From contig CM119385.1 in assembly GCA_051294905.1 (NCBI GenBank), positions 14,632,001 to 14,696,000 of the forward strand: a DNA stretch of 64,000 nt, in the 5' to 3' direction. Both the position numbers and the translations under genes were made by a program. The notes beneath the pieces were generated by a model, which made no database searches, was not told the DNA's origin, and saw nothing but the letters and a program-made list of their open reading frames with translations. Positions 33,831-60,387 of this stretch are shown piece after piece. The stretch comes from Botryllus schlosseri. Its lineage: Eukaryota. How positions within the stretch are numbered: the first letter of the stretch is position 1; the number at the start of each line of letters is the position of its first letter.

Positions 33831-34291
33831 AGTACGTGCCCTAAATTCTCTGCGATAACACCGCACTCCCTTTTACCGAGAAAATCTGATAATTCTGAGA
33901 GGATAGAAAATTTAAAGCAATATATATGCAATTAACAATATTATTGACTGATTCAGTGATGAATTATAGAAAATTTTCGCGCTTGCCGCGATTTACATAA
34001 ACTCACTTCCTACACTGAGTAAAATGAATGTGCTCACAAGTACTGGTAAAACATCGATCCCGGTCGCCCTACAAAAGTTTCAGAAGTTTGGCATATCACC
34101 CTGTGGGGTCCAAGACAAAACTTTTTTGGGGGGTGGGCTGACGAAGTGATTTTTGACCCTGATTTTGTGAATGGCCGGTATAGCTGTTGTCAGGTGTTTT
34201 TGTTCGGCGCATTGTATACATAGTAGTCAGCTTAGCAGAAATAGGCATTTCTTCGTCTTCGTCCCCTGGATGTCATCATGAACAGAATTAT

Positions 34292-35011: not shown

Positions 35012-38000
35012 TGCAATGGAATTGCCGCGGCATATATAGAAAGATCAATGAGCTGAAACATTTTTTAGAAGGCTTAGCGGAAGAGCCACAGATTATAGCA
35101 CTTCAAGAGTCACACTTGGTGTCCCGTTACAAGCCGAAAATCCGTGGATATAAGCTTATTCGAAAAGACCGAGATATCCATGGGGGTGGGGTCTGCTTAT
35201 TTATCAAGGAAATGTTACAGTACGAAGAAATCGAACTGACCGGATCGGACCCGATAGAAGCACAGCTTATCAAGGTTGAAGGGATCAACATCATGAACCT
35301 GTACGCTCCACCAAATCGATTACTTTCTAAGACCACTCTAGAAGCATGCTTCAACTCCCTGTATTCGAAATCAATTATTGTAGGCGATTTTAATGCGCAC
35401 CATCCATTATGGGGTAGCAGCAGTACAAACAGATATGGGCGGAACCTGTACGAAGTGATAGACGGCAATGATTTTGTGATTACCAACGTCACGGCAGGCA
35501 CTCGCATCAACATCGCGTCGGATTCTGGTGTCACATCTCTATTAGACCTATGCATTGCATCAAAAGATATCGCACTCAAAATAGAAACCACGGTCACAGA
35601 TCACTTACTTGGTAGCGATCACTTCGTCATATTTAACGCGATCAATATCCCAATCGCTATACCAGAAAATCACTTTCGGTCTTGGTCATTCCACAAAGCA
35701 GATTGGGACAGGTATAGGCGAATTGCTGAACACGAATTATTGTCTGGACTTCAAAAGGGTGATAATACCATTGAACATGCTTCCCAAGCAATCATACAAG
35801 CGGCAAGAACATGCATTCCTGTATCAAAACCTCACAGAAAGAGCTGTGTTCCTTGGTGGAACGAATCCTGCTCCAGAGCAGTTCGTCGTAAACGAGCGGC
35901 GTTTTTGAAAATGAAGCTATCCTTTCATATCGATTCAGTGGTTGCGTTCAAGAAGCAACGCGCAGAAACAAGGAAAACAATTCAAGCTGCCAAAAAATCA
36001 CACTGGGAAAATTTCTGCCTATCACTGAATAGCAATTCTAAATTAACGAAGGTTTGGCGAACAGTACGATCGATGATGGGAACCCGTACATGGAACGTCA
36101 TAAATAGTCTCAAGTCCCAAGGCATTAAATTAACAGACAACACTGATAAAGCAAACGCGCTTGCTGGACAATTTGCGTCGGTTAGTAGCGACCAAAATCT
36201 CGATCCGCAGTTTAAGGTCAGACGACAAGAGTTCATAAACGAATACATCATACCAATTATGCAAACAGAAAATCCAGCAGACGACGGTATTAATGAGCCT
36301 TTCACCATGAATGAGCTGGAAAGGGCATTAAGTCGAGGGAAAAGTACATCTCCAGGACCCGATGAAATTTGCTATCAGATGATAAGAAATCTTAACCGAC
36401 GTAGCCGAAATTATCTGCTGTCAATCTTCAATAGATATTGGAAAGATGGGCAGTGCCCGGATCACTGGCGGCACGCGATAATCATTCCATTGCTAAAAGA
36501 GGGCAAAGTCACGTCCGACCCAGCGTCATATCGACCCATATCGTTAACGAACACCACGTGCAAAGTAATGGAGAGAATGATAGCGAATCGTCTGAATTGG
36601 TTTCTGGAGAGCAAAGGTCTGATAACTCCCGTGCAAAGTGGTTTCCGGGCTCGAAGATCGACAACAGACTGCATAATGGCTCTCCATGATGAAATATACG
36701 AAGGAATTTGGAACAAACGCTCAACAATAGCAGTATTTCTTGATTTTCAGAAAGCGTATGACTTGGTATGGCGAGAAGGTGTGATCTACAAGCTTCACAA
36801 GCTTGGAATATCCGGCAACATCTTGAAATGGATATATTCATTTATCAGCAATCGCACTTTCCAAGTACGCGTAGGACAGAGTCTATCTAATACCTACATT
36901 CTAGAAAATGGCACTCCCCAGGGTAGTGTGTTAAGTCCGACTTTGTTTAGCGTAATGATTAATGATCTCCCCACAGCAGTCAACAGCACAATGAATCTAT
37001 TTGCGGACGATGCATGTATATGGGAAACAGGACTCAACATTACAGCATCGGCGAAAAATATCCAAAAATCCTTGGATGAAGTGCTAAAGTGGACAACGAA
37101 ATGGGGACTTCGTGTCAATGTGAAAAAATCAGGTGCAGTCATATTCTCCAAGCGTAGGAAACTACCGCAAGTGAACCTTCAGATAGGAGGTACACCACTC
37201 TCAATAAATAAGCAACATAAATATCTTGGAATCAAATTTGATTCGCGCCTATCGTACCGACTCCACAAGGATGCGGTCGTGGACAAATGTACTAAAAGAT
37301 TGAACATTTTGAGGGTATTAAGCGGGACATCATGGGGTGCGAGCAAGCCTTGCCTTCTAGCTGTATATAGAGCACTAATTAGATCCGTCATTGAGTATGG
37401 CTGTGGAGCGTATTTATTTTCGCCACTCTACATCATACAAGCAATACAGAAAATTCAGAACACAGCTCTGAGAATATGTTGTGGAGCTATGATGAGCACG
37501 CCAGTCTACGCCCTGCAGCATTCCTGCGGGGAACCACCAATTCACATAAGACAACTTCAAGCGTGTTATAAGTATCGCAGTATGATTCTGGCAACTCCAA
37601 ACCACCCCTGCATATCATTAACTCGAGAATCTTGGCACGAATTTTTTCCCGACTCGCCTCAGTTTATGACGTTTCATATGAAAACCAGATCCGCTTCTAT
37701 TCAAAATATTATTTTACAGTCTAGGATACCGAGTGCATGGCCGCCCTGGGTGAATCAACAGCTTGTTGTCGATTTTAAATTGACGCTGATCACCTCCGGG
37801 GCACACCATCCTGAATACATACGTCAGGAATGCGAACGTTACATAGCGACACGTTATCGCACTTATACGAAAGTATACACCGACGGTTCGAAAACAAATA
37901 CGCACGGTGGTGCAGCATTTTGGGTCGACGAAGTTCAATATTCTCATTGGGCCTCACGTGACGCCAATCAATCAATATTTTCCTCGGAATTATACGCAAT

Positions 38001-38712
38001 TATGTTAAGTCTAAATTGGGCGAGCAGCGCATGTATGCCGTCCAAACGGTTGGCGATATTCTCCGACAGTAAAAGCGCATTGACGTCGATCAAAAACAAT
38101 GGCAATTCGAATAGTTTAATTGAAACTATTATCTTACTTTGCAGAGACTTGGCAACAAATGGAGTACAAGTCACGTTTACTTGGATTCCCGCTCACACAG
38201 GAATACGTGGCAATGAAAGGGCGGATAAACTCGCAAAACTGGCCGCTAGCACACCTGGACCCAACGACGAAAACGGAACGATTCTGTCACTTCCCGAAAT
38301 GAAGTCATAGACCAATGGATTATGTACTGAGAAGTGGATGTCGGAATTAAATGGCATCGATCGAGACTCTGCGTACCTTCGTATGCACGCACCGTTCTCA
38401 TGCATTACCCGTCCACGAAATTTGTCGCGGAGGGAATCAGCAATTATATTGCGACTGCAAACTGGACACTGTAAATTAAACTCACACCTCCAACGCATGG
38501 GTTGTCACGACAGTGGTCTCTGCGAAACGTGCAGCGTACCTGAAACTGTCGAACATTTTCTACTGACGTGTCCTCGATACGATCACCAGAGACAATATTT
38601 AAAAAACGTAGCCGAACGTAGCAGTGTGAGATTTACCTTGAAATGTCTGTTGACTGATCCGCACATGGTTATTGCGGTCGTAGAATTTGTAGTTTTGTGT
38701 AGACATATCTGA
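35011..38712 (+). CDS. LINE ORF2 polyprotein (AP endonuclease, reverse transcriptase, RNase H, CCHC finger) with one in-frame TAG at 38308-38310
   Basis: APE motifs: QWNCRG, LQESH, GDFNAHHPLWG, GSDH. RT motifs: PGPD, YRPISL, QSGFR, FLDFQKAYD, GTPQGSVLSP, FADD, YLG. RNase H motifs: YTDGS, SELYAI, FSDS, WIPAHTGIRGNERADKLAK. The 38338..38712 ORF is in the same frame and carries LRLQTGH and CETC..ETVEHFLLTC. Confidence 0.95.
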
Positions 38713-44500: not shown

Positions 44501-45361
44501 AGGATTTGTTTGTTACTTTTACAAAGATGAGTACGTTGCATACCTCCCCCATCGACAACACGACAAAAACACAAAGAAATCATCATGGCGCATAATAGTT
44601 TACTACGGTCAATTAGGAAAATCCGAAGATAGTCTGTGCAGTATAGAAGCAGAGCGTCTGATTGTATAACGAATGCTTGTATTATCGTGTAGGCCTGTGG
44701 AAAATACACTATAATAGGTTGTGTATTAATTGACAAGCCGGTATAGCCAATAACACTGCCTTCAGGATGGGTATTTTTGACTCTCGAAAATACAATATCT
44801 GTAAAGTTCTGATAGTACGAACAGCAAAAGGGCTTTCGCGGCAGCGGTGAAAGAAATAATTTGGTGACTTCATAATATTAATGATCGTGCTCCGTGCATA
44901 ACATAGAAGCAACATCGTAGAAAGTGCTGGATATCGGCAGACTATAATGTGATGTATATAACAATCAGCTGTGGCTTGCCGGCAATCACATGATGTTAGA
45001 GCGGCCAGGCCATTTTCTATTTTTCTTTTCCTCGAGCACGGAGAATAATTTATTAGGATTAATAAGATTAGACGGTTCAGCTGAAAATGTGGCAGCTTCT
45101 TTTTATTGTTGAGGTATATCTGTGCATCGTACGCTGATGGGCTATGTCTCGTTGCAGGCGACGTCGAAACGCAGGCTTGCTTGACACAGGAAAACTGATT
45201 ATTTATGTGTCGTCGTTATATCGCACATCACATCTGCAATAAAATGGATTTCAAATCTCAGAAAGCAGTAAACGAGCCTTTCAGAAAACGTGATAACGGC
45301 GAGAGACTATTTATAGTATTAGCGTAAAACGCAACACTAATCACGTTGACGGCATGGAGGA

Positions 45362-45565
45362 TACATAAATGGGATCCAAGTTGTGGAGATTCACTCACAT
45401 CGGCGAAAGCCGAGCTTGAGTCATCAACGGATATGAGAGCTAGGCAAACGTAGGCCTACCAGTACAACGTACCGGCGAAATGTTTACCACGATTGCTGAT
45501 GCCTTCTCATTTGCCTGCTTTCAGAATTTATCTGATCACGAAGTCTTTACATAGCTTTGAAACAG
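45362..45565 (+). promoter_or_regulatory. Possible promoter and 5'UTR splice acceptors of ILP-A
   Basis: TACATAAA at 45362-45369; acceptors TTGCCTGCTTTCAG (45524) and TTTGAAACAG (45565, directly before the ATG). The two-acceptor layout mirrors ILP-B. Confidence 0.35.
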
Positions 45566-46030
45566 ATGACGATGTGTTCTTTGGAAAAAGTCGCGGTCGT
45601 GATGTTCGTCTTTGCCATATCGAGCAATGTCCCACAATCGCATGCATTTCGATCGAATGGGCGAATCAGAAGGTGTGGAAACAACGCGAAGGAATTCCTT
45701 CAATGGTTCTGCAGGGACGATTCATTCACCTTTCCATATTCTACGCATTCGGGCGCTTTATGTAAGATCTTATATTGCACGTTTCTTAAATAAGAACGAA
45801 ATACTTATCCGTTTATTTTGTAAGTAACAGCTATCTTCGGTCGGTATCGTTTCGGAGACAAAGGAGCCTATCCGTTCGTACGTTTGGCGGTGGATTGCTG
45901 CAAATACGGCTGCCTTGATTCCGAATACATGAGGATGTGTGACTATCACAAGAAAATCAAACGATGTGAAAGACGAATGCAATACCGCAAAAGAGACGGC
46001 AGGAGACGGCGTCACTGCACAAGGATATAG
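45566..46030 (+). CDS. Insulin/IGF-like peptide precursor A (2 coding exons: 45566-45761 + 45831-46030; 131 aa)
   Basis: Splicing a 69-nt phase-1 GT-AG intron (45762 GTAAGA ... TAACAG 45830) gives MTMCSLEKVAVVMFVFAISSNVPQSHAFRSNGRIRRCGNNAKEFLQWFCRDDSFTFPYSTHSGALSIFGRYRFGDKGAYPFVRLAVDCCKYGCLDSEYMRMCDYHKKIKRCERRMQYRKRDGRRRRHCTRI*. It has a hydrophobic signal peptide, a B-chain CG-x10-C, an A-chain CC-x3-C-x8-C, and a phase-1 intron in the C-domain as in insulin-family genes. The ORF track shows only exon 1 (45557..45793). Confidence 0.92.
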
Positions 46031-48344
46031 TATAATATGGGGCTCAGACATGTCATGAAACGAACAGAGAAATCTTCAATATCCACAGAAAGAATATGTA
46101 GTTGTGCTAATATGCCACCATATACCGTAATGTCATGAACAGTTATTCCACAAGACCATATATCCGCATGAAGCCCTGCACAAATATCTAGTTGGATCAG
46201 ACTAAGTAATGATATCGTATTTCACTTCTCTGACTCATCTGAAAGACTGCTACATCGAACCCATTTCAAGAGGGTGTCCAGAGTTTTTTTCCTCGTCAAA
46301 TATCATTATATAAATCCCCAGCTACGTCCACCGAAGTATTAAAACATCAAAAGTTATTGTTTTCAATTGTACTGCTTTATTTTCAGTACAGCGAGTTAAT
46401 TTGCACATTGTTATTTCTTACATATTCACTATTTATTGAATTTATTTCAACTTATATACTACTGTTTAATTATATCAACAAGATGAGTTGAAATGGCGTG
46501 GGCGTGTTGCACTGTTGATAATGCAGCAGTCGAAACTGCTCATTTCTGACAGGGACTTGGTTTATGAAGTAAGCTTTCTGAGAGAAACGGAACGTCGTAT
46601 CGCAAAGTCTATCAATTTGTCGGTGCACATGGAATGCATTTTTTTACATATCAGGTGCGTTGTATCCTCAAAATCAACCACATCTTTGACTATACACCTA
46701 ATTTTACACCCGCCTGACAATGACAACTCGCCATCACATACACGATCCTAGGTCATTCTATGTAATCAAAGGATTGATCATAATTATGCGTGTTTTCGTG
46801 TTTGTTTTAAAAATTTCTTGTCAAAGACAAAGATTAAGGCAAACCAAGTTTGTAATTGAAAGGAGAAGCTTTTGGACGATCGCTGATCATTTTCATCAGT
46901 ACAACAAGTGTAACGCATACCAAAACATCGTCGCAGGGCATACTGATCTTGAAATTGAAATATTATCTCGAGGCGGAATCGCGGAATCGCAGAGGCCTAA
47001 AACAGTGTTTTTATAATTGATGCTTGAATTGTTCATTGTACCATAGTATACTAAACATTGAATTAAGTCAGATATTAGCAATACAATTAAATATTCATAT
47101 GATTACCGATCGAAACTTGGTGTTGGTAGCTATTAAACGGTCTATTTTAAATAGGACGCCTATAGCATCTCTGCTATTTCTATCAAAACAACTTTAAAAT
47201 TTCAAAATAGTCGCAATTTTCTTCTTTTGACATTGGCAACAATGTGAATTAGGCGTTTTACGGAGACATGACTAACAAGTATGCTTCTAACAGTGCTGCG
47301 TGCTTTTTCATACTGCAATTTTCGATACCAAATGACTAAGCCTGTGTAAGGTAATATCGGGTATCACGTCAACATTGCGGAGATATCACGTAGCAAAAGC
47401 ACGTGTTTGGTAGTGTGTAATTGTTGACCTATCGCGATAAATTGTTAACAAGTTGGTAAAAATCGTGATGACCCGTTTCGGGATATCAATCGCATCTAAA
47501 ACAAAACTAGGAGATCGAAAACTCATTGGTATGTTGTGATTTTCATGCTCTCACGCGATCTATAGTAGAAGAGGAAGTTTTTATGTGTGTCCTTGTAGCG
47601 ACTAAAGTAATAGGGGGACCAGGTTCCTGTTTTGGGATAGCTGATGTTGAATTAAGTGCAACATCTTCATGTGAGATCGGGATGCCAGTGAGTTACAGCG
47701 ATACCAACAATCAAACATGTTACACGGATGGATTTCTACTAGAGAAAAATCACTACTACATGGGTTGTTTTCACTACAAACACCTGGCAATATATTTTGA
47801 CATACTGCTTGCCTCTGCATATACTATAGTATATTAAGAGTAATTCTACACATATCAGCCAACTTTGAGTCTCTCCTTAACGTGACCGTAATAATGTGTA
47901 CTTCAGGCCTACTTCATTTACCAAGAATATGTATGACTACTGTTTGTGGTCGATGGAGTTATACCCTAGCTCACATAGTATTCCAAAACAAACATCTAGC
48001 TAGACGTCAGTCTTGGATGAGTGGCGCCCAAATTTCACGGTCTGGATTAAAATTTCCAAACACATGTGGAGACGGCCTATGATGTCGGATACAAAATTAC
48101 AACGGGAAAAGAACCAAAATAACTAAACCAGACGCGTGGCCGTATATACCATCACCCCCCCCCCCGTCAAATTTCAACTATTTAGTTGAGCTCATTTAGA
48201 GCGGGTTGCGCATTTGTTTTTCAAGTTCTCTTCCTCTGGTGGAAACTGAACTTATACTACCAGGAAGTAGCATGCGATAAAAAGGACATAATAAAATAGA
48301 GTTCAAAGATTATTAGTATATACTTTTATAATTTGAGTAATCAC

Positions 48345-48423
48345 GAAATTAATTATACTTTCTCAGCAGCTGCAGAGTAGAAAAACCGAACTTCGCGAGT
48401 TCATTAGCAGTAATCAGCCAGAC
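48345..48423 (+). pseudogene. Possible degraded LINE AP-endonuclease N-terminus
   Basis: LIILSQQLQSRKTELREFISSNQPD resembles the APE start L..K..EL..FI....PD; downstream motifs are lost. Confidence 0.3.
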
Positions 48424-50739
48424 ACTCACACGATTGACCTGCCAGAACAAAAGCAATTGTTTCGACGATTCAATGTACAGCTTTCTTTCGCGGAAATGAA
48501 ACGGTATGGATCACGATCAGTCGATCACACACAAGCGTAATACAGGTCTCAGGTACAAAAGGAAATTCCATTTTAAATGGTTGAGAAGTCCAAAATGGCT
48601 GCTATGCCCCTTGTTGACTATAGGTAGTTGTGAATTATATGAAAACGAAAATAAGGTTTCGAAATTGATAGCCTCCATACCTGAAAAGTGAAGATTGCTA
48701 ATATTCTTACAGGTCAATTCAAGTCTCTATTCGAAATTGTCTGGGGATTGTCCCATTTGTCCCAGTTCACTCCTATATTTATCAACCTAGTTGTCACGAA
48801 AGAAATCTTAAATTGGATGTTGGTAAATGTGTTTGCTTGTATCGTTCATGTTGAGGTGAGCTGCTAGTAGAGCCCACAAGACGAAACACGACAATTAGCA
48901 ATACAGGAATTAACTGACTTCTAAATGAACTCAAAGCGGTAAGCTATAGCATGGTAGCAAAAACGGTATTTGCCACCTACCGTGCATTCTTGGTACACTC
49001 AAAATAAAATTAAAAATACTTATCCGAATGGAGATATAAAATTCGGAAGAATAGTACAAATACTGACAAGCTCAACACCCCCCTGAATTTTTACTGAGTA
49101 CATACATGACTTACAGTAAGTGCTTACGGGATTGAAATTGAAACAACACGCAGATATAGATTTCTCCGGCAGACGTGAAAAACTGAGTTGCGTTTAATAA
49201 TAAAACTATTGTCCCCCATTTGACGATATGGGACTGCAGATCAGAATCATAGATTTTTTTCAGGCGGCTATTACCATTTATTCATTCGTTTATTAGGTAC
49301 CCTTCACTGTGTTGTGTATATATAGCGAGTGACTCAGGCTAGGCCACCACCTTGAAATGCTATTGCGGGGCAAACTTTCAAGTGAGATGTTTACATTCTC
49401 CGATTGATGAACCGAAATGACGCAATGATTGCATCTGTCTATCCGCCAGGCGACAGCTTAACTTGAAGTAATTGTTTCTCCGTAACCTTGTTTACGCAGA
49501 ATAAAAACAAGGAGGTCTCTGGCTTATTGGCCCGAGTGTTTTTACGTACGCGGAAAGAGCCATTGCCCCACGGAAAGTCCGGTGATCTTATTTTTTTATT
49601 GGAAAGAGTTGTCAGTAGCGTATTGTGTTATAATCTAACAGTTATCAAATCGTGCAGTGCTAAATAAGACCAAGTTGCGAACGCTAGCATCATAATAATA
49701 GGCCTGTTTGTCATTAAGCGTCGTTTCATCACTCTGTGGTTGATGCTAATCCTTACCAAACCAACGCTAATGGTGTAATTAATCACAGAATATCGAGGCT
49801 TACCACGTAATGCAATCACGATCAGTCCACATGAGGCTATGTAGGCCTACGCTCGCTACGCACCCGCCCCATTGACTAGTCGCAGTTAGGCTATTTCGGG
49901 TCGTGTGTTTACTGCAATTGATTGGCACATTCTAGTGGGTGATGTCAGCATAACTTTCGCCAACGAACCAGAAATATAGACGCGTGTGTGAGGGGGTCCT
50001 GCCGAGCGTACTCTTGCTGATGAAGTAGACCAGCCTGCGATTGCAGAATAAAATCAAGCAACAAAAATACATCCTTGGACCTATTACCATAGCAACGTTG
50101 ATACGGATAAATGGAGAATTTCGAGAAACAACCTAACCTTATTCCATATATATTCATGGAAATACTGGCGGCAACCGTAATTAAATTGTGTAAAAATGTA
50201 CTTTACAATATCTGTTTGTATAACAATGTTCTTTGTAGTCAATAGCCCGAAGAAATCAATTTTTTACAATTTAATTTGATGATGATGCATCGTCTTACAA
50301 TGTGTAAGAAACGCCTCTTCGTAAATTTGAAATAAACGAAAGATGCCAGCGAACCACATGGCGGCGAAGCAGCTGTGAGCTATTATTTGTACAATCGCCA
50401 TCGGGATGGTACTATTTCTGTCCTCAGTTGGGTACTGCATGCTTCATGCTCACATAGTTGTATAGGGACCAAATGGCGCTTTGTGGAATCGTAAAAAGAT
50501 CAATGCTCAATAATGCCCTAACTATATCAGGATACACTACGTTTTACCCACAAAGGTACAGATTGTCGACTTTGCGAACGTGTGGTCGTTATATCGCACC
50601 AGAGATCAATTCACGGAGACATACTCGCAACCTTGTAACTGAAGAGATTTGTAATGAAAGCTTATCGGCTTAACAGCAAGAATATTAGTTAGTCAATGAT
50701 TATCTTGGCTGTTTCTCATATCATAGCTCATTCTTTTGT

Positions 50740-51012
50740 GGCGAGATAGCGTAGTGGTATGGCCCACAGCCGCAACACCAATGAGTTGCGGGTTCGAGTC
50801 CGACTGAGGTCGACTCCATAATCCCTGTTTTAGAGGTGTATCTAGGCTCCTCCTCGCCACGTGATCCGCGTAAGCGGTGTCTTGTGAAAAGCCTAGAAGT
50901 GGGCCGTGCTACAAGTCGATAAATATTGAATCGAAAACTAAGAATATCGGCCTGGTGTAATATGACCAATGTTGTCGAAACACCAACAATGTCAAATAAA
51001 CAAGCAAACAAA
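50740..51012 (+). mobile_element. Full-length tRNA-derived SINE between the ILP genes
   Basis: GGCGAGATAGCGTAGTGGT A box, GGGTTCGAGTCC B box, conserved core, tail GGCCTGGTGT...GACC...GTCGA.ACACCA, (CAAA)n end. Confidence 0.92.
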
Positions 51013-53593
51013 CAGGCTCAGTCTGTAACTATATACTAACTAGCATCGAATTTGTACATGAAACTCGAATAATATCCAAACTTATCGTGTATGATTGGTG
51101 AAGTACCATGATGAATAATTCAATTTCCAATAAACTCTCTACTATACATCAAAATGTCACGGCTATTTTGCGAAGACTAATGCTCTAATCTGAACCGGAT
51201 CCTTGGTGAAAGGTGTTTGCTGCAGGGGTCGCAGACCTCTACAAATTTCAGATGAGGTAGAACCTACAGGACATTGTAGGCGGCTAAGAAACTATTCGTT
51301 CAATTAAATGTATACATACTAAAGCTGCATTTTCACATCGGTTAATAATTAACACTTTAACATAATTTGCATATAACATTGGCAAAGTAACAGTCTGCGT
51401 TTGTTAGGAAGAATCGGCATCTCACAGCAAGTTATGATTCTCATTGCAAAGAGTCCGTGAAGCATATTTTCATTCCTAGCATTTAATCATATTGACCGTC
51501 AGGACGTGGAACATTTTAGGGGAATAAAATGGTTCGGGATCAAAACCGTTTGGGAATCCATCAATGGTGCGGAGTCTCCTATCAGCACATATTCTCTGTA
51601 TATGTATTGAAAGCGTGGAAGGATTATCTGAGTCCGCTGTCATTCATCTACATAAAAATATTTAATCGTATACTGTAATTATGTGTAATGTATACTGTAG
51701 CTCTGTCGAAATAGAGAGTATTACTCGGTAAAATAATTTCATAAAAAAGCTTATGATATCCCAACGATAAGTGGATTTAACTGTCTCACACATTCAAATT
51801 GAGATTTCGTGGAAACTAAATAGGGTCAGAGGATTACCCGAATGGCAGAGATGGATAGAGTATTTATCATTGGTACCCAAACTGTATAGTAAATAACTGC
51901 GCTCTGCCCTCGCAGCAAGGAATGCAACATACAAAATATTCGTTTTAAAAGCAATATTTAATAACAAATAAATTGTAATTGACCATACACCCTCCCATAT
52001 TATTATTATTAGCAATCTGAAAGTAATTCATATTTGTTGAGAGGACAGCCTAACGGCTTGACCGGTTTCCAACTTGCACTGCACATTTAAGAGCATGTGA
52101 AATGAATTATCGTGGTTTTATGAGACAAATCTCGACTGATCGTAAGCTTTTGTCATTTAGTGTCAGTCGTAGGTACTAGGTACTCGAGTACTACTGGGGA
52201 ATTTGGAGAGTCAAGAAACAGAGCTACCCAATTAATTTACTTGTAGAAATAGATAATGTCAGATTACTTAACAAAAATGTCGTCAATAGTATCATTCGTG
52301 CTTGAATCTTAAAAAAGAAAATCGGAACATCATACTCAAAGATATCAAAACGTTGTTTGGATTGCAGCGAACGATTAATTACATTTCCTTCCCAGCCGGA
52401 CATCGAGAGACGTGTTCACCGCAGAATCGCTGGAAGATTCATGTAGCACGTATCTAATAAATGTACAGTAGCAATTTTTGTAATAAGAAGGACATAAAGT
52501 TCGTGGAGTCACCTTATAGATGTCAAAAGGATCAAAATGAGGTTTGGTTTGAGGCAAGATGACTTATCGACTTTATACATTACGCTTGCTATAATTTGCA
52601 TAATCTCAGGCTTATCGCGTATTTGAAAAACAATTTTACATGACTAATTCAAATCATATTAAATTTACCACTAGATGCCCAAATTCCATGGTATTTTGAA
52701 GAGATTGATGTGTAAACTTCAAGCAATTAAATTAGCAATATAGCGGTTTTATTGGTAATATAATCTCCCCGGCCACATTAAATAAATGCAATCGTGGATT
52801 GAACAGTTGCGATAATCATTAGTATCAGAATATATGAGACTTGAACACGTGTGTAAAAAACGAAATAGGTGTAAGGTAACTGGAGAACACTCATTAATCC
52901 CTCTGAAATACGGCGGTTTCGGAGATCGTGTTTAGTATAGAAACAAATTGGAGACAGGTTATTTTTAATTTCTATTGTCGCCGAATGTTGTGTAATCAAA
53001 TTTTACGTCGAAATCAACTTCTTGTGGGATGCAAAATTGCGCTGGTCTGGATATTAAAATGAAAATTATTAGGTGACTGACGAACAATACAATAGAATTA
53101 CGGAGAACACGGAGGTAGCGTAAAGGTTTTGTTTAGTCATAAATTTTATGTTGCTGTCACTATAGTGACGAATTTTATGGAAGTGCTGAGAAATGTACGG
53201 AACAAATCATCACTATTTCGATACTGTTGGTCTGCGGAAGTCAAGCAATACTCAATCCCATTCGATTCTGTCATGCAGTCATAAATCGGAAACATTGGCA
53301 TGACATTTTTGATATGTCAATATTAGATCCTTTATATTTTCATCACGCGAAGCAGATGCATGATTGTGCATGGTAACTTATATATTTGTATCAAATGATT
53401 GCAAGTGATTGCAGAATAGTAATGAAAAATAATACTGTACTATACTGAAATACTCTGAAAGTAATACAGAGCTGCAACATTGCAGCAAACAGTATAGTCG
53501 ATCATAATGCCAAATCTTACGCTTCTGTTATCTTGTTACTTTGATTCCATAGAAGTATAGCAATAGTCCGCAAGACTAAAGCATGACCCCAAT

Positions 53594-55621
53594 CAGACAT
53601 GGGGTAATCGCGATTAGTAATCGTAATCGATTACGACGATTACAGCATTTTCAAGTAATCGTAATCGCAATCGATTACATTCGAAAAAATTCCGAAGTAA
53701 TCGTAATCGTAATCGACTACTTCGCATATTTAATCGATTTCTTTGTGAAAGAACGATTACTTTTTATTTGTACGACGACTGTGACATAAACTGAACATTC
53801 GTTAACAAGCAAGAGATATTATACCAGTTATTGGGTCACAAACGTCTGATTTTCAAATGCCATTGCTCATTATTCCGTCAGAAGTAGCCTATTAGCTGTG
53901 CTCGTCTTTGCGTAAGAAGTATCCAGCACATTCCACACTGATAGTAAATAGATAGTCGATGTACATTAGTGTGATTGTAAAACACCCACCATTCAGTATA
54001 TCGGGTAATCAATATATTTCAGACGCCACTACCTCGCTGCAGGATAATTAATCACGTCTCTGCCTAGTTTAAAATAGCAACTTTTGTATTGATGTTTGGT
54101 TATGCTTAGTTAAACGCAATTTGACCGTTTCTGCTTGGCGAGCAGTAGGCCTATGTGCTGGTACGAGCGTACACCAGACAAAGATTTGAAATTTTGTACT
54201 AATCAAATAAAATATTACGGTTTCCACAACAAAGCATTAAAAATCAACAGCTGGTGATATATATCATAACCGGGCCGTTTTTTTGCCGTTTCTCGTAATG
54301 GCAGCTTGCATTACATTATCTGTATTAAGTTGAAGGCAGAATTTTATTTTCACCTTCTCTTATTCTCATATTATTCTACTCAAAACGGGCGTCAATGGCT
54401 ATTTCACAATTCTTTACTGAAGATTTGGACCTGCCGCCATAGCCATCGGCTTATAGTATATACCATGTTACCGTGGGTTGTAGCTAGAATCAGAATCAAA
54501 ACAGCAAAATCGTCCTCCACTCCAAACGTTGGTCTTGGGCCCCCAAAGGGTAGTCAATTTTTAACTTGAAGATTTAATTTCGTCAATAACATTGGTAATT
54601 GCATTATATTGCATTTTTAATCCTATCTCAGCCTCCGAAGGTCAGACTTACCTGAAGAGCAGGGGGCGCGTAATCCATAATTATAACATCTGGTATCTTG
54701 CAATAATTACTGTAGTGCATGTTGTTAATTCGTGACCTCCGGTCTGTTATATAGTCAAAAGATATTGTAGTGGCCCAAACTTAGCAGACTAAAAGAAAAA
54801 CTTTCGTGAGACGCACACACAAATTGTCATGTCTAATGCTCTGTGGGTGCCTGCGGGGCATTTGCATCGTGGGCTCAGATTGGAAGGACCGGACTGTTAG
54901 TCACGCCCACCCAGCGCGGCTATTGACAATGGACACATACCCCAAATTTCGGCCAACGTCTTTCTTTGATAGCACACTTCGTAGAGTCGCATGTTGGCCT
55001 AAACTGCATATGTCTTTTGGTGTGTCGGGGCGCGGTATTGACTGGCACCATAATGCCTATTACTATGAGTTATGCAACCTTTATTTCTTGAGGGGAGACG
55101 TTTGCATTTCGAAATCAAGCTATCTAGAGACATTTAAATGGCAAAGCTCAAAGAGAATTTTCAAGTTAATGAAATCTGTCGAGAATACGCTATAATTTAT
55201 GTTGGTTCACGAAATACTTTTGAGTCCCCTCTGAGCACGCTCCGCATCCTATTGGAGCATTTGGGGTGCAGCAGTTATGGACCTGGCAATAATGCAAATC
55301 ATTGGGTGCGATAAATCGTCCTTTATAAAATGGGCAATCTGTGCATTGTGACGTAACAAGCAAATGTCACATCTGTTTTAAAGAAATATGTTATCTCATT
55401 AGGCCTTTTCAGCGCAATCCATGTATTGTCTTCCAATATAACTACTAAGATGCAAAATAAATGTAATCGTGAGTAATCGTGATTACTTTTCCAATGTAAT
55501 CGTAATCGTAATCGACTACTTCCTGATTTTGCTGTAATCGTAATCGTAATCGTAATCGCGTGATTCCGAAGTAATCGTAATCGCAATCGATTACATTCAT
55601 GAAGTAATCACCCCATGTCTG
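53594..55621. mobile_element. 2.0-kb non-autonomous hAT-type element with GTAATC(G) subterminal arrays
   Basis: TIR CAGACATGGGG / CCCCATGTCTG; exact TSD ACCCCAAT at 53586-53593 and 55622-55629. Confidence 0.92.
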
Positions 55622-56859
55622 ACCCCAATATTATAGTAAATCCATCGTCTTATTGTTGACTTGAGGGCGTTACAAATAAAGTGAAGACTCCATTGTGTCG
55701 GGCTATATTTTGCAAATCATATCAAATTCGAACTACGTCTATATATTGCCGATATGGATGGATTTGGGCCATACTGACGTTCGGCTACTCAGGAATAATG
55801 ATAAATATCAACTTCAGCCGGCTGTTGAATGATCATGATGCAAAAGCCGTGTTTGCTCCATTATAGCAACAACAGCTTGGCAACGAATAGACTTTAAACA
55901 CGAATAACTGATCCCATTTTGATTGACTTTTTGTAGATTTCTATTACTAACATCAATTTTACGGAAGAATCTGAGCAACATCAATCATTTTATTGAATTC
56001 GTTCACACTTTGTATTATCGCCACTACAAAATCATAAATTATTTTCGAAGAGCCGATCGCAAATCACGAACAAACGACAACATGCATATCATAGCATAAC
56101 TGTGGACGTGAATTCGGCATGATTGAAAATTATCGATATTCTATTCGTCACCGTATATCACTGTCTACCTTCCCGATTTTTCCAACCTGCCCGCAAGCCA
56201 AAAAACGATGCCTCCCCCTGCCTCATGTCGAACGAAATTACATTCAACTGAAACGTTCTAGAAGCCGTCAAATAAATTTCAACCGGTTTTTATGAATCAA
56301 ACTTCACGTTTGGTTATACGCACTGGATGCGATTATAATAACTAGCATAAATTTAGAGTTTAACGTTGACGCAAAGAGGCTTTTGACATTTTCACAACTA
56401 ATGATTACAACATTTCCATCGCACTTACACGGTTCGCGTGGGATTCACTGTCGTGCAGGTCAAAAATTCACGAACGCTCGTTTTCTGTTGTCGGTTGATT
56501 TTACGACTATTCCCCGAGTATATATATTTAGACTCGACATTTGCTCTCCTGATTATCATGGGAAATTTCTCGAATGCTGCTTTCGGTAGAATATAACTTT
56601 ACCTTTGAGGTAAGCAGGACCGTGTCATTTGTTTTGGAACGTTTACGGGTTCTCATACGATGGCATGCCGATTGACAAACTTCCGAAATGTATGTTGTTA
56701 TTGTGTTTATAATTCATGGTGTTTGGCCATACATATGGACATTTTACACCAGACCAATATTCCTGTTGATTGGTCCATGTCATTTTCACTCTAGGATTTT
56801 GTAATACACCGCTTGTGCTGCACGAAGTCTAGATAAATCTCGAACACAGCGGGTGGGTG

Positions 56860-56915
56860 GACTCTGAAGTTGACCTCGGTCGAACTCGAACCCACGACCC
56901 ATTGATGCTGCAGCG
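56860..56915 (-). mobile_element. SINE head fragment
   Basis: The reverse complement gives GCTGCAGCATCAATGGGTCGTGGGTTCGAGTTCGACCGAGG, matching the SINE head. Confidence 0.6.
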
Positions 56916-57860
56916 GTGGAAATATATTCATTATGCCCTGTTCATTTCACGCTCGATTTAAAATTCAATCAGCTGTGATTTGGTGACGCACATAGTCCTA
57001 TATTTTGTACGCACCGAAATCAATTATGATTATTGAATGCTTACAATATGCACCGTGTGGTTTCATATAGACCCAAGTTGAATGTGAAATAATATATAAA
57101 AAGAGGCCCGTCCTTTAGATACGCAAAGGAGTATAAGCTGCGTTGGTGATTTGACAAAACACATTCATATGAAACTCACGCAATTTATATTTATGAGCTA
57201 TTTGTAATATTAAAGACGGCGAGATTTTATTCATCCTATACTTGAGTATAGGGCATAGTCAAATCCAAATCAATATATCAAAACACGACATTTACTACTT
57301 CCCGATTCATTAATTCCCACTTAATTATCACGAAGCAGGAAATACGATATCCCCATTCACGGGTTCATCCACATGCTGTTTCCCGTGAAAGCGATAAGTC
57401 TCTGTGATGTCAATTTGTGTTAACACCTCGCATTATTCAATTAGAAAAAAAGTGTCTGTACGGTAGACATCGCGAAGTTTCTTCTGTCACATTCACCCGG
57501 GAATTCGCTTGCAGCTGCCAATTGACTTTATTCCCTCTGCGAGACATGACCCGCACGTTTCGCACTATTATTACCCGAGACAAATTTTGAGGGACTTAAA
57601 TACATTAATCTTAACAGGAAGCTATCGGTGAAAACAGAAACGTTTGGCACATACCAGTAGTATGAAAGTAAACCAGTGGTTTGGAGTAAGGTCATGATCC
57701 GCTGAACGATACTCTTTAAAATGATTTGGCGGTAGTGGATATACGCAGTTCTCGCTTGTAACAATCGCAGGAACAGAATTTAGTACATGGCGTATGTGTG
57801 CAAATTGTGTACACTCGTTAGTTTACATCGAGTTACCATTTTGAAATGGAATTTCCAATT

Positions 57861-58256
57861 GAATAGTATATTATTCATATTGAAATGAACCCGAATATTT
57901 TCGGCTGACACTCGCCAGGGGTAATCGTCAGCAACTAGTAGAGAATTTTAAAGAATACTGTACATCAACAATCGCATCACAAAATATGACGTCACCGGCA
58001 TGAAATTTCGAATATTCGGGGCGGAGAGAGCGCTTAAGCTCAATGTACTATTTTTAGATGGTACACAAACTCCTTCTGTAGACACAGGCTTGGTAGGTGC
58101 ATTTTGATAAAAGTGGATCCCAAGGCACCCAAATGAAAGTGTTGTTTATTGTTGATATACAATGTTATTTCCAATTCTTTGCTACTTACTGACCATTACC
58201 CCTGACGAGTGTCAGCCGAATATACTCGGGTTCATTCCAATATAAATATACTATTC
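57861..58256. mobile_element. MITE with ~70-bp TIRs and an AATT target duplication (Sola1-like by TSD, inference)
   Basis: GAATAGTATATT..GAACCCGA..TTCGGCTGACACTCG.CAGGGGTAAT and its inverse at 58185-58256; AATT on both sides. Another TIR copy lies at 18661-18714. Confidence 0.75.
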
Positions 58257-58602
58257 AATTGTATGTTGAAGTTCTGTACCTCCAAGAAGCTCTTCGAATG
58301 GAATTTCCAATATTATATGTATGAATTTATAGTTACAAGTAACACGCGACAGATAATATAACTCAGAGACTCCGATAAAAATTCCGTTCGTTGTAAATGG
58401 ACAATTGGGCATAGTCATATTAAACGTTTTTTTTTCTAGTATCAAATCGGCGAACGCATTCGGTATAGTGTGAATAATGATTGGTAGAACATACACGCAA
58501 TCGTATAACGATGACCTTTTCGACATGACTACATATTATGATTATGGATACCACACGTGGATCAAATTCGAGTGCAATCATCACTGTTGTGGGCGATCGT
58601 AA

Positions 58603-59118
58603 TATATATGCACTACAGAAGAAATGCACTGCCTGTGTTTACAAAAAGTTGATCGCACCGAAAACCGCAATGTCACCCTGCTGTCGCCATCCAGTCACGT
58701 AGGTTGGAGTAACTGGTACCAAGCAGCACATATATCAGAATAGGTAAGTAGTTTAGGCATTCATGATTAACGCCAAAATAGTATGCTTTACTAATCGGCT
58801 AGCATTCGCTAATTACGTGAAAGCTTTACAATTTCAACACCGATCGTGATCACGTCTCTACTTAGCAGGATATTATCTTAGCTGATCTCTCCTTTTAATT
58901 AAGGTCAATTTTCACCTCTCCTAGCGTATATAAACATCGGATATGAACGGAAAAGGCAGTACGTTCAAGTAACGAACTTTGTGTCGGCATAGCATTGTGG
59001 ATGATCGGTATATTTGTAGGAGTATTCAGCAGGTTGCTGGTAAATGGGAATGATATCGAAGTAAAATCGCCTTATTTTACAGGTCGCTAGAATAAAGTTA
59101 CCTATTAACAGACACAAC
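58603..59118 (+). promoter_or_regulatory. Probable promoter and 5'UTR intron of ILP-B
   Basis: Consensus donor AG|GTAAGT at 58743/58744; acceptors CCTTATTTTACAG (59082) and CTATTAACAG (59111) just before the ATG; TATA-like TATATAT at 58603-58609 and TATATAAA at 58927-58934. A 5'UTR intron is typical of insulin genes. The TSS cannot be determined from sequence alone. Confidence 0.45.
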
Positions 59119-59592
59119 ATGGAAACAAGAATGACTGTAATGCTTGTGGTGACTATGACTCTTTTCGTCGGTTTCGCCCCGATCGAAGGTAAACGATACA
59201 ACGGATTGATTCAGAGATGCGGACAAGACGCTGTGAATTTCCTGAAGTGGATGTGTGAGGATTCGTCGTTTAAATTTCCGTTCCCCTACGAATACTTGCG
59301 AAGTAAGTACACCAATTTTGATGCTTGCTTATTGCTCAATCGATCCGTTCATTCACGAAGTATACATCTCACGTTTTCAGTATTACGCCTGTACCGGGAT
59401 CCGTACAAGGATACGTATCCGTTTCAAAGCGCTGCTATGAATTGTTGCCGGTACGGATGCCCGGAAACCACTTACCTACGAATGTGCAGGTATCACAAAA
59501 GAATCCAACGGTGTGAAAAGCGGCAAAGGCATCACCGAACGCATCACGGAAGAAGGAAGGCCAAGCGCATCTGTCACATCAGCAGGAATTAA
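59119..59592 (+). CDS. Insulin/IGF-like peptide precursor B (exons 59119-59302 + 59381-59592; 131 aa spliced, 157 aa if the intron is retained)
   Basis: A 78-nt phase-1 intron (59303 GTAAGT ... TTTTCAG 59380) sits at the position equivalent to paralog A. Spliced protein: METRMTVMLVVTMTLFVGFAPIEGKRYNGLIQRCGQDAVNFLKWMCEDSSFKFPFPYEYLRILRLYRDPYKDTYPFQSAAMNCCRYGCPETTYLRMCRYHKRIQRCEKRQRHHRTHHGRRKAKRICHISRN*. It has a signal peptide, CG-x10-C and CC-x3-C-x8-C. Identity to paralog A is about 50% (42/84 by manual alignment) from the B-chain to RCE. Confidence 0.94.
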   Translation: METRMTVMLVVTMTLFVGFAPIEGKRYNGLIQRCGQDAVNFLKWMCEDSSFKFPFPYEYLRSKYTNFDACLLLNRSVHSRSIHLTFSVLRLYRDPYKDTYPFQSAAMNCCRYGCPETTYLRMCRYHKRIQRCEKRQRHHRTHHGRRKAKRICHISRN

Positions 59593-60387
59593 TCCCACTT
59601 GATGAACAGTAGTTTCGAGACTGCCAAAATGCCAAAACTATTTCGTTGGTTTTATAATATCAACGAACTTTTATTTTACAGCTTTTTGATACCACTGTGA
59701 ATTTTCTCTGCTAATATTATACGAAACAATATATACTTGCGTGCTATGCGTTATAAAATTGAAAGGTTGAAATTGAAAGCTCAGGGCATCTTCGGGAGTA
59801 TCCAAAGTAGGGATGAAAATATGATGGGGTGGTTACGGAGAAATATTCGGACAGGTTACAGTATATATGTTACACTTGCTGCTAAGGAATATATGTTAGC
59901 CTATACATACGCAGGGTCTGCGTCAGTAATTGCAGAATAACTATAATCAAACTTAGTATATCTAGCACTAAAATGAGACTGATAGACATCACGGAGTCGC
60001 TCATAATGCTTCCAGGCAGCAGGATTAACCATGGTAATGATCACTGCTGAATATTGCCACCACAAAACAATCCAGCAAGCTACACTCGATGATCTTGCGG
60101 TTTTTTAGCATCTCCATACTGCCAGAGAAAATAAACTGCGCCTCTTCTCCTCCACGTGGCGTGCGCGTAAAATCCGCGAATGCGAAGTGTTTCCGAACAC
60201 GCATTTAATACATTGAGCTATGGTGCACTTGAATGCGACATCTTTACATCGCGGAAGACTGTAATGTCAGCATCACCAGGGATCGAGAACCTTGGCCCGC
60301 GAGCCATATATGGCTCTTTTGGGTGTAAGATATGGCTCTTTGCGAAATTTTTAATTTTGTGATCAATTTCACAATATTGCAGCAACT

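What the first reader, a model, noticed from the sequence alone, without database searches (positions are those of the whole stretch)
45566..59592. Tandem pair of divergent, single-chain, eight-cysteine insulin/IGF-like genes
Seen: two same-strand genes 13.5 kb apart, both 131 aa after splicing, about 50% identical in the core. They share the intron position and phase, the six-Cys spacing and unusual residues (FL.W.C in the B chain, YPF before the A chain, RMC.YHK.I.RCE after it). Paralog A is invisible in the ORF track without splicing. Established: CG-x10-C plus CC-x3-C-x8-C defines the insulin/IGF/relaxin superfamily. Neither C-domain contains KR/RR/KK, and neither B chain has the relaxin RxxxRxxI/V motif. 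Inference: these are uncleaved IGF-like hormones from a lineage-specific duplicated subfamily that may be undescribed. This is my best candidate for the novel system in the window.
Basis: partly seen in the sequence, partly recalled or inferred. Interest (0 to 1): 0.8.

Follow-up and report, generated by a model that had tools for sequence, protein, structure and literature searches.

The report
Sea-squirt array of divergent insulin-like genes
The two genes are real, spliced, secreted-type distant relatives of insulin/IGF (expression shown for gene A only) and belong to a nine-locus gene array of a family that all sea squirts seem to share but that databases still call "uncharacterized".

Summary
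Gene A (45566-46030) and gene B (59119-59592) each have two coding exons split by a short phase-1 GT..AG intron. Each encodes 131 aa with a hydrophobic leader, CG-x10-C, CC-x3-C-x8-C and two more Cys in a very basic tail. Identity is 39% overall and 48% in the core. RNA-type contigs from three runs carry A's exact splice junction.

They are not an isolated pair. The genome holds eight intact copies and one pseudogene within 182 kb of one chromosome-sized contig. A and B fall in different sub-clades of that array.

The family profile finds about 23 relatives. Every named one is an ascidian "uncharacterized protein" (Styela, Ciona, Phallusia, Clavelina).

Insulin-superfamily membership rests on:
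- the Cys signature;
- the conserved phase-1 C-domain intron;
- profile hits to solved chains, all of them IGF, relaxin, INSL or insulin (best E 0.005);
- one distant member that reaches Pfam's Insulin cut-off;
- a confident core model (pLDDT 88) whose best structural neighbours are IGF, proinsulin and insulin-like peptides.

Pfam's Insulin model does not hit A, B or their close relatives.

The single-chain IGF-like mode of action and the fourth disulfide are inferences. The scan had already noted the distal part of this cluster (s1-243931). I rate it a new variant of a known kind, of moderate interest.

The parts
45457..46447 (+). Approximate extent of the gene A transcript (5' UTR about 110 nt, 3' UTR about 420 nt)
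   Evidence: Contig pieces of runs X4 (45457-45761 + 45831-46206), X25 (45535-45761 + 45831-46284) and X20 (45593-45761 + 45831-46447), plus raw RNA read depth of X23. An ATTAAA lies at 46338.
45566..45761 (+). Gene A coding exon 1: hydrophobic leader, B domain (Cys37..Cys49 = 45674-45712), F.FP motif and the start of the C domain
   Evidence: splice donor confirmed
45762..45830 (+). Gene A intron, 69 nt, GT..AG, phase 1, contains in-frame stops
   Evidence: Joint 45761->45831 in contigs of three runs; zero RNA read depth in that bin
45831..46030 (+). Gene A coding exon 2: rest of the C domain with YPF, A domain (CC..C..C = 45896-45940), helical extension with Cys7 (45965-45967), basic loop, Cys8 (46016-46018), stop
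59119..59302 (+). Gene B coding exon 1: leader, B domain (Cys34..Cys46 = 59218-59256), F.FPF motif
   Evidence: The junction position matches the spliced, cDNA-like contig of the relative P0001.
59303..59380 (+). Gene B intron, 78 nt, GTAAGT..TTTCAG, phase 1, open in frame (which is why B shows as a 157-aa ORF)
59381..59592 (+). Gene B coding exon 2: YPFQ, A domain (59443-59487), Cys7 (59512-59514), basic His/Arg/Lys loop, Cys8 (59572-59574), stop
   Evidence: RNA-like contig sets hold about half of the sampled words of 59000-59800.

Best explanation
Genes A and B are two members of an eight-gene (plus one pseudogene) tandem array on G000 contig C15 (14.621-14.803 Mb). A is shown to be transcribed and spliced. 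For B, expression is only suggested: RNA-like contig sets hold about half of its sampled words. The array encodes a tunicate-specific, highly divergent clade of the insulin/IGF/relaxin superfamily.

Each protein is built as follows:
- a signal-type leader;
- a B domain (C-G-x10-C) followed by a conserved F-x-F-P-F;
- a short C domain of about 20 residues, interrupted by the phase-1 intron typical of the superfamily and ending in YPFQ;
- an A domain (CC-x3-C-x8-C) whose second helix runs on through YHK to a seventh Cys;
- a strongly basic loop of 16-20 residues closed by an eighth Cys.

Inferred mechanism: the protein is secreted as a single chain, like IGF, because A and B have no dibasic site in the C domain. 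It folds into the insulin core with the three canonical disulfides and a fourth Cys7-Cys8 bond that ties the basic tail into a loop. It then acts as an extracellular ligand, most likely on the single tunicate insulin/IGF-type receptor tyrosine kinase. The F-x-F after the B-domain's last Cys aligns with the IGF/insulin aromatic triplet. The basic loop may bind the extracellular matrix or be nicked at its G-R-x-x-R / R-x-K-R sites, which would leave a disulfide-linked two-chain form.

Shown here: gene structure, splicing and transcription of A, selective constraint, family range, and superfamily-level similarity in sequence and predicted fold. Inferred: secretion, lack of C-domain cleavage, the fourth disulfide, the receptor and the function.
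For: - Gene models and shared phase-1 intron in all eight paralogs. The same intron phase and position occur in the Ciona and Styela genes. A phase-1 C-domain intron is stated to be characteristic of all insulin genes in PMC8286064.
- Splice and transcription of A.
- Constraint: 6 synonymous to 2 non-synonymous polymorphisms; pN 0.38 against saturated pS between A and B, and pN 0.22 against pS 0.89 between B and P0001.
- Array.
- Family range: 25 representative hits, about 23 of them real. Every named one is an ascidian 'uncharacterized protein'.
- Superfamily link:
  - The profile of the family against PDB sequences returns only IGF-I/II, relaxin, INSL3/5 and insulin (15 of 15 and 20 of 20 rows). 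The best is IGF-I at E 0.005, aligned through the B, C and A domains.
  - Family member P0016 scores 23.1 bits against Pfam Insulin (cut-off 23), covering positions 4-81 of 81.
  - The core model has pLDDT 88 and pTM 0.74, with helices placed as in insulin.
  - Its top Foldseek PDB rows are IGF-II, mini-proinsulin and IGF-I, with TM by target 0.54-0.67.
  - AFDB rows after the Ciona family member are ILP5, relaxin and insulin-like domain proteins, with probability up to 0.93.
  - The top three Atlas shape matches are INSL5a, relaxin-3-like and ILP7. Language-model neighbours are all insulin families.
- Cys7-Cys8 pairing: both are conserved across the family, and both are lost together in P0007.
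Against: - Pfam's Insulin model gives no hit on A's or B's pieces, on the B read-through, on the close spliced relative P0001, or on this cluster in a six-frame search of the genome.
- Every individual structural match is statistically weak (Foldseek PDB E >= 1). The Foldseek searches with the full-length model (PDB, AFDB Swiss-Prot) and both VIA-align searches (full-length and core models) did not list insulin-family chains.
- The models are of the relative P0001 (62% identical to B), not of A or B.
- B's junction was not checked with reads of this species.
- Two paralogs (c1, c8) do have KR in the C domain, so 'uncleaved' is not a family rule.
- TyrA19 of insulin/IGF is Met here.
- No receptor, processing or tissue data exist.
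Confidence: 0.72

Rival explanations
1. They are relaxin/INSL-like ligands that act on leucine-rich-repeat or RXFP-type G-protein-coupled receptors rather than on the insulin receptor kinase.
For: A-chain-only hits of the family profile include relaxin, relaxin-3, INSL3 and INSL5 at E 0.04-0.7. Structural neighbours include relaxin (probability 0.93), INSL5a and relaxin-3-like. PMC8286064 argues that some invertebrate insulin-related peptides use such receptors.
Against: The B-chain RxxxRxxI/V motif is absent from A, B and all paralogs. The best full-length alignments are to IGF-I/II and include the F-x-F region. Known relaxin-type precursors are cut at dibasic sites, and these are absent from the C domains of A and B.
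Confidence: 0.12
2. The insulin fold has been recruited for a non-endocrine job. The protein would be a fast-evolving, secreted, highly cationic factor, for example matrix- or tunic-bound, antimicrobial or defensive, or reproductive, and the basic disulfide-closed loop would be the active part.
For: The array shows birth-and-death evolution: a pseudogene and near-identical recent copies c6/c7 with dN/dS 0.59. Paralogs are strongly divergent, with pN 0.38-0.45. The Cys7-Cys8 loops carry 4-9 Lys/Arg in 16-20 residues, 9 in A and B.
Against: The most conserved residues are those of the insulin core and the F-x-F-P-F / YPFQ stretches, not the tail, whose sequence and length vary. The family is old and is kept as a single gene within at least 10 kb either side in Ciona, which is unlike typical defence arrays.
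Confidence: 0.12
3. The Cys pattern is a chance resemblance or convergent, and the genes are not related to insulin or are not functional.
For: No Pfam Insulin hit on the genes themselves. Weak individual E-values in the fold searches.
Against: Splicing and transcription are shown, and purifying selection is evident. All 15-20 profile hits among 177,635 PDB sequences are insulin-superfamily chains. The intron phase and position match the superfamily. A family member reaches the Pfam cut-off. Several independent structure libraries put insulin-like proteins on top.
Confidence: 0.03

Closest known systems
Vertebrate IGF-I / IGF-II
   Same: Both are single-chain B-C-A proteins with a short C domain and a C-terminal extension beyond the A domain. 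The region C-G-x10-C-x-D-x-x-F-x-F aligns residue for residue with IGF-I's [20 protein letters not shown]. IGF-I gives the best sequence hit (E 0.005), and IGFs are among the best fold hits.
   Different: There are two extra Cys after the A domain. The A-domain's last helix is predicted to continue for about 15 more residues. The basic tail gave no Pfam match in the family-wide scan, so it is not detectably like the IGF E domain. Met replaces TyrA19. Orthology is not shown. The genes score below Pfam's Insulin threshold.
Ciona INS-L1, INS-L2 and INS-L3 (Olinski et al. 2006, as cited in PMC12702675)
   Same: These are the tunicate insulin-superfamily genes already described, labelled relaxin-like, insulin-like and IGF-like.
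   Different: The Ciona member of the present family is XP_002128503 / F6RUP4. Its only names are 'uncharacterized LOC100177666'. It has no Pfam Insulin hit and no other insulin-like gene within 10 kb on either side. I could not read the 2006 papers, so non-identity with INS-L3 is inferred, not proven.
Octinsulin and eight-Cys multinsulins of ambulacrarians (Veenstra 2021, PMC8286064)
   Same: They also have eight cysteines, implying four disulfides. Octinsulin has a single phase-1 intron. Both occur in lineage-specific tandem arrays.
   Different: Those precursors have KR convertase sites, and multinsulin genes have four coding exons with an extra phase-2 intron. Here there are two coding exons and no conserved KR in the C domain, and both extra Cys lie after the A domain. 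None of the family's motifs occur in that paper's sequence supplements.
Canonical insulin-like gene of the same genome (C6:7862768-7863163)
   Same: It lies in the same genome and belongs to the same superfamily.
   Different: It is hit directly by Pfam Insulin at 28.6 bits, lies on another contig, and has a different B chain (LCGSQLLSVLHSIC). The C15 array is therefore additional to the ordinary insulin-like genes.

Membership tests
Insulin/IGF/relaxin superfamily | Six-cysteine signature: C-x11-C in the B domain and CC-x3-C-x8-C in the A domain | tested here: met
   Present in A, B and all six other paralogs, and in every full-length relative of alignment A2 except P0022, which has three extra residues after the CC.
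Insulin/IGF/relaxin superfamily | Phase-1 intron inside the C domain | tested here: met
   Phase 1 in all eight paralogs and in the Ciona and Styela genes. A's junction is seen in RNA contigs. The criterion is taken from PMC8286064.
Insulin/IGF/relaxin superfamily | Significant match to Pfam PF00049 (a detection tool, not a defining trait) | tested here: not met
   No hit on A's or B's exon pieces, the B read-through, P0001 or P0002. The six-frame genome search with PF00049 does not hit the array. Only distant family members hit: P0016 at 23.1 bits (cut-off 23), P0018 at 16 bits, P0015 at 13.5 bits. The spliced A and B proteins themselves could not be submitted by reference.
Insulin/IGF/relaxin superfamily | Profile-level sequence similarity to known members | tested here: met
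   The family profile against 177,635 PDB sequences gives 15 of 15 (A1) and 20 of 20 (A2) rows that are IGF, relaxin, INSL or insulin. The best is IGF-I at E 0.005 across the B, C and A domains.
Insulin/IGF/relaxin superfamily | Insulin fold: one B helix and two A helices packed around three disulfides | tested here: inconclusive
   The core model of relative P0001 has pLDDT 88 and helices between the Cys positions as in insulin. The top rows are IGF-II, mini-proinsulin and IGF-I (TM by target 0.54-0.67) but at E >= 1. AFDB rows are insulin-like with probability up to 0.93, and Atlas TM is 0.43-0.50. VIA-align did not list the family. Disulfide geometry could not be read, because no coordinates were available.
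Insulin/IGF/relaxin superfamily | Secretory leader | tested here: inconclusive
   All paralogs have a hydrophobic N-terminus of about 20 residues, modelled as a helix at residues 2-17. No signal-peptide predictor was available.
IGF type (single chain) | Short C domain without convertase sites, and a C-terminal extension | tested here: met
   There are 36-38 residues between the B domain's last Cys and the CC of the A domain. A, B, c4-c7 have no KR/RR/KK there; c1 and c8 each have one KR. An extension of 29-34 residues follows the A domain in A and B.
IGF type (single chain) | Activation of the insulin/IGF receptor tyrosine kinase; orthology with vertebrate IGF | not testable with these tools
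   No receptor assay is possible. The sequences are too short and divergent for a trustworthy orthology tree, so none was attempted against vertebrate IGFs.
Relaxin/INSL type | B-chain RxxxRxxI/V receptor-binding motif | tested here: not met
   The B helices read CGNNAKEFLQWFC (A) and CGQDAVNFLKWMC (B), with no Arg pair. The same holds for the paralogs.
Octinsulin / multinsulin (ambulacrarian eight-Cys peptides) | KR convertase sites flanking the C peptide; for multinsulin, four coding exons with an extra phase-2 intron | tested here: not met
   Two coding exons and one intron. No conserved KR in the C domain. No motif match in the paper's sequence supplements. Criteria are from PMC8286064.

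The most novel reading that the evidence does not exclude
This is a fourth, tunicate-wide class of chordate insulin-superfamily ligand, beside the insulin-, IGF- and relaxin-like genes. Its signature is a disulfide-closed, furin-cleavable basic loop after the A domain. Maturation would then nick that loop, giving a two-chain hormone by a route different from C-peptide excision, and/or the protein would use a receptor or matrix partner other than the insulin receptor kinase.
Probability: 0.2. Interest if true: 0.75.

Novelty: new variant of a known kind. Interest (0 to 1): 0.58.

Why it matters
Tunicates are the closest living relatives of vertebrates, and reviews credit them with just three insulin-like genes whose functions are unknown (PMC12702675).

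This finding adds an expanded clade, conserved across ascidians, that standard domain models miss. It changes the count of insulin-superfamily ligands at the base of the vertebrates. It also gives a natural series of single-chain, four-disulfide insulin scaffolds with variable basic tails.

It poses a testable question: does one receptor kinase serve all these ligands, or do some use another partner? It is also a practical warning that Pfam-based inventories undercount insulin-like genes in fast-evolving lineages.

Tried and rejected
- Pfam on exon pieces, on the B read-through and on P0001/P0002 gave no Insulin hit.
- Foldseek with the full-length P0001 model (pLDDT 72) found nothing useful in PDB or Swiss-Prot models.
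- VIA-align wide searches with both models listed only generic helical matches at Z < 5. I re-modelled the core alone, which did give insulin-family neighbours.
- Literature searches for the family's peptide motifs and for the Ciona and Styela accession and LOC numbers found nothing relevant. Motif search in Veenstra's supplements found nothing. Searches for the Ciona INS-L names found no open paper with sequences.
- Two of the 25 profile hits are false positives and were dropped. P0013 is a 3217-aa repeat protein on a bacterial-looking contig. P0025 is a 401-aa repeat protein with a recurring QQLCE(F/Y)H(R/K)KHGHC motif.
- A multinsulin/octinsulin identity was considered and rejected on exon number, lack of KR sites and Cys placement.
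- I did not submit the spliced A or B protein as typed letters to any tool. Results for 'the protein' therefore rest on exon pieces, the in-frame B read-through and the relative P0001.
- No complex prediction was run. The receptor gene was not assembled, and the tool takes no eukaryotic references.
Full report
**What is in the sequence**

Two + strand genes lie at 45566-46030 (A) and 59119-59592 (B), with start codons 13,553 bases apart.

- A is split by a 69-nt intron (45762-45830, GTAAGA..AACAG) that contains stop codons.
- B is split by a 78-nt intron (59303-59380, GTAAGT..TTTCAG) that happens to stay open in frame. This is why B shows up as a 157-aa ORF.
- Both introns are phase 1, and both spliced products are 131 aa.

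Each protein has, in order:
- a hydrophobic leader;
- C-G-x10-C;
- a conserved F-x-F-P-(F/Y);
- a stretch ending in YPF;
- CC-x3-C-x8-C;
- Y-H-K and a seventh Cys eight residues after the A domain's last Cys;
- a very basic loop (16 residues in A, 19 in B, nine Lys/Arg each);
- an eighth Cys close to the C-terminus.

Identity between A and B is 39% overall and 48% from the first Cys to Cys7.

**Are the genes real?**

I laid four runs on 44800-47000.
- Contigs from three of them (X25 and X4 of one study, X20 of another) carry exactly the joint 45761->45831 with GT..AG ends. Together they outline a transcript from about 45457 to 46447.
- Raw reads of a bulk RNA-seq run (X23) cover both exons and give zero depth in the intron bin.
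- The variants seen in those runs inside A's coding sequence are six synonymous and two non-synonymous. Both non-synonymous changes lie in the tail.
- Between A and B, synonymous sites are saturated (pS 0.91) while pN is 0.38. Between B and its closest relative P0001, pS is 0.89 and pN 0.22.

These are the marks of expressed genes under purifying selection.

B's junction was not checked with reads of this species. It is supported in other ways:
- consensus splice sites;
- the same phase and position in all paralogs;
- P0001, a 130-aa protein 62% identical to B, encoded without interruption on a 1.2-kb assembled contig, whose sequence runs straight across the homologous junction;
- P0002, which keeps an in-frame intron at that same spot.

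RNA-like contig sets of several studies hold about half of the sampled words of the B region.

**Not a pair but an array**

The window is G000:C15:14632001-14696000. Searching the whole 495.5-Mb assembly with B's exons and with a family profile finds the family only on contig C15 between 14.621 and 14.803 Mb.

After fetching 224 kb around the window, I modelled eight intact two-exon genes. All have a phase-1 GTAAGT or GTGAGT donor at the homologous place.

| Gene | Start on C15 | Strand | Length (aa) |
|---|---|---|---|
| c1 | 14621087 | + | 139 |
| A | 14677566 | + | 131 |
| B | 14691119 | + | 131 |
| c4 | 14721107 | + | 133 |
| c5 | 14780196 | + | 136 |
| c6 | 14800096 | - | 167 |
| c7 | 14801673 | - | 150 |
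| c8 | 14803192 | - | 153 |

A c8-like second exon with a stop codon in the A domain lies at 14800842-14801063.

- c6 and c7 are recent copies (dS 0.20).
- The other pairs compared (A/B, A/c4, B/c1, c1/c5) are saturated at synonymous sites.
- In a maximum-likelihood tree, A pairs with c4 (support 98/95).
- B pairs with P0001 (100/100), inside a group with c1, c5 and a Styela clava protein (90/95).

So A and B are not each other's nearest paralogs, and their split predates speciation within the group. My results agree with it and join the two ends.

**Who else has it?**

A HMMER profile of the family, read against 1.84 billion cluster representatives, gave 25 proteins at E <= 0.001. Two are repeat-protein false positives. 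The rest share the whole architecture, including Cys7 and Cys8.

All members that carry a name come from ascidians and are called 'uncharacterized' or 'unnamed':
- Styela clava: XP_039265314, XP_077976300, XP_077976301
- Ciona intestinalis: XP_002128503 / F6RUP4
- Phallusia mammillata: CAB3261911
- Clavelina lepadiformis: CAK8697241

From my own knowledge of taxonomy, these four genera represent all three traditional ascidian orders. The others come from unnamed transcriptome, metatranscriptome or metagenome assemblies. The window's organism is therefore almost certainly an ascidian (inference).

The Ciona and Styela genes have the same phase-1 intron. Styela has another family member 10 kb downstream. 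The Ciona gene has no other insulin-like gene within 10 kb on either side.

**Is it insulin-related?**

Evidence for:
- The Cys signature is present.
- A phase-1 intron in the C domain is present, which Veenstra (PMC8286064) describes as characteristic of all insulin genes.
- Profiles of the family against all PDB chain sequences returned only insulin-superfamily molecules. With alignment A1, 15 of 15 rows were of that kind, and with A2, 20 of 20. The best was prepro-IGF-I at E 0.005, aligned from the leader through the B, C and A domains. C-G-x10-C-x-D-x-x-F-x-F lies on IGF-I's [20 protein letters not shown].
- Three distant family members hit Pfam Insulin, and one (P0016) reaches the curated cut-off over the whole model.
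- A model of the core of P0001 (residues 26-108, 32-row alignment) is confident (pLDDT 88, pTM 0.74). It has a helix between the two B-domain Cys, a helix over the CC, and a last helix that begins after the A-domain loop Cys and runs on past Cys7.
- Its Foldseek neighbours in the PDB are led by IGF-II, mini-proinsulin, IGF-I, viral insulin-like peptides and single-chain insulins, with TM by target 0.54-0.67.
- In AFDB clusters, the first row is the Ciona family member (TM 0.86, E 5e-5). After it come insulin-like peptide 5, relaxin and 'insulin-like domain' proteins with probabilities up to 0.93.
- The top three of the ESM Atlas shape search are INSL5a, relaxin-3-like and ILP7.
- The language-model neighbours are all insulin families.

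Evidence against:
- Pfam's Insulin model does not hit A, B or close relatives, nor the array in a six-frame genome scan. That scan instead finds an ordinary insulin-like gene on contig C6.
- No single structural match is statistically significant.
- The full-length model and the VIA-align searches did not recover the fold.

Taken together, I regard superfamily membership as well supported and subfamily placement as open.

**How it probably works (inference)**

- A and B have no dibasic site between the B and A domains. The spacing there (36-38 residues from Cys to CC) is IGF-like, not proinsulin-like. A single-chain mature form is therefore the simplest expectation. However, c1 and c8 each carry a KR, so this is not a family rule.
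- The relaxin B-chain motif is absent.
- The strictly conserved F-x-F-P-F occupies the place of the B24-B26 aromatic triplet that insulin and IGF use on their receptor kinase (established knowledge). I therefore favour the single tunicate insulin-type receptor kinase as the target. Its existence is taken from the table in PMC12796670.
- Cys7 and Cys8 are conserved throughout, and both are missing together in P0007. This suggests they pair and close the basic loop.
- That loop contains a recurring G-R-x-x-R / R-x-K-R pattern (A: RRRR; c1: RKPR; c5: RAKR; Styela: RRSRR). It could be a matrix- or heparin-binding element. It could also be a furin site whose cleavage would leave the tail piece attached by the disulfide.

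None of this has been tested.

**Comparison with what is known, and novelty**

- Reviews list three tunicate insulin-like genes (relaxin-like, insulin-like, IGF-like; Olinski 2006) with no known function.
- The Ciona member of this family has no name other than LOC100177666 in NCBI or UniProt. It shares its 90% cluster only with its own older version, has no Pfam hit and sits alone. I infer that it is not one of the three, but I could not read the original papers.
- The family differs from ambulacrarian octinsulin and multinsulin in exon number, in lacking KR sites and in where the extra Cys lie.
- It also differs from molluscan eight-Cys insulins, whose extra Cys are, from memory, at the N-terminal ends of the chains.

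I class it as a new variant of a known kind. It is an undescribed, tunicate-wide, four-disulfide, IGF-like clade of the insulin superfamily, locally expanded here to eight genes. Interest is moderate: it revises the ligand inventory of the vertebrates' sister group and is easy to test, but it does not overturn a principle.

Noticed in passing
window 34187-38712 (+): An apparently intact non-LTR retrotransposon. It has a 274-aa ORF1 with no Pfam hit. Its 1099-aa ORF2 has endonuclease, reverse transcriptase and RNase H domains. A 124-aa ORF with a zf-RVT match follows. It lies between array members c1 and A.
   Followed up: partly
G000:C15:14800842-14801063 (-), outside the window: A c8-like second exon with a stop codon inside the A domain and no matching first exon, wedged between c7 and c6. 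With the near-identical c6/c7 pair, it suggests a recent duplication of a [c8-like + c7-like] unit followed by decay of one copy.
   Followed up: partly
Styela clava XP_077976300 and XP_077976301 (P0004, P0006): NCBI lists these as isoforms X1 and X2 of one gene (LOC120341590). They differ along their whole length, leader included, and look like two neighbouring paralogs merged into one gene model.
   Followed up: no
G000:C6:7862768-7863163 (L011) and G000:C10:2556613-2556762 (L012): These are the only places in the genome that Pfam's Insulin model hits (28.6 and 18.3 bits). The C6 locus has a leader and a B chain reading LCGSQLLSVLHSIC, so it is an ordinary insulin-like gene separate from the C15 array. 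I did not check whether it is one of these.
   Followed up: partly
P0012, P0017, P0019, P0021, P0023 (database proteins): Several database 'proteins' of this family are read-throughs from exon 1 into the intron, so the B domain is followed by unrelated sequence. Automatic gene callers thus systematically mis-predict these short two-exon genes.
   Followed up: no
window 53583-53789 (+) and 55445-55600 (-): Two short ORF artefacts between A and B have similar odd repeats (RLRL / DYDY / ITIT). One overlaps a (GTAATC)4 microsatellite at 55534-55558. They may be copies of a small repeat element in opposite orientation.
   Followed up: no
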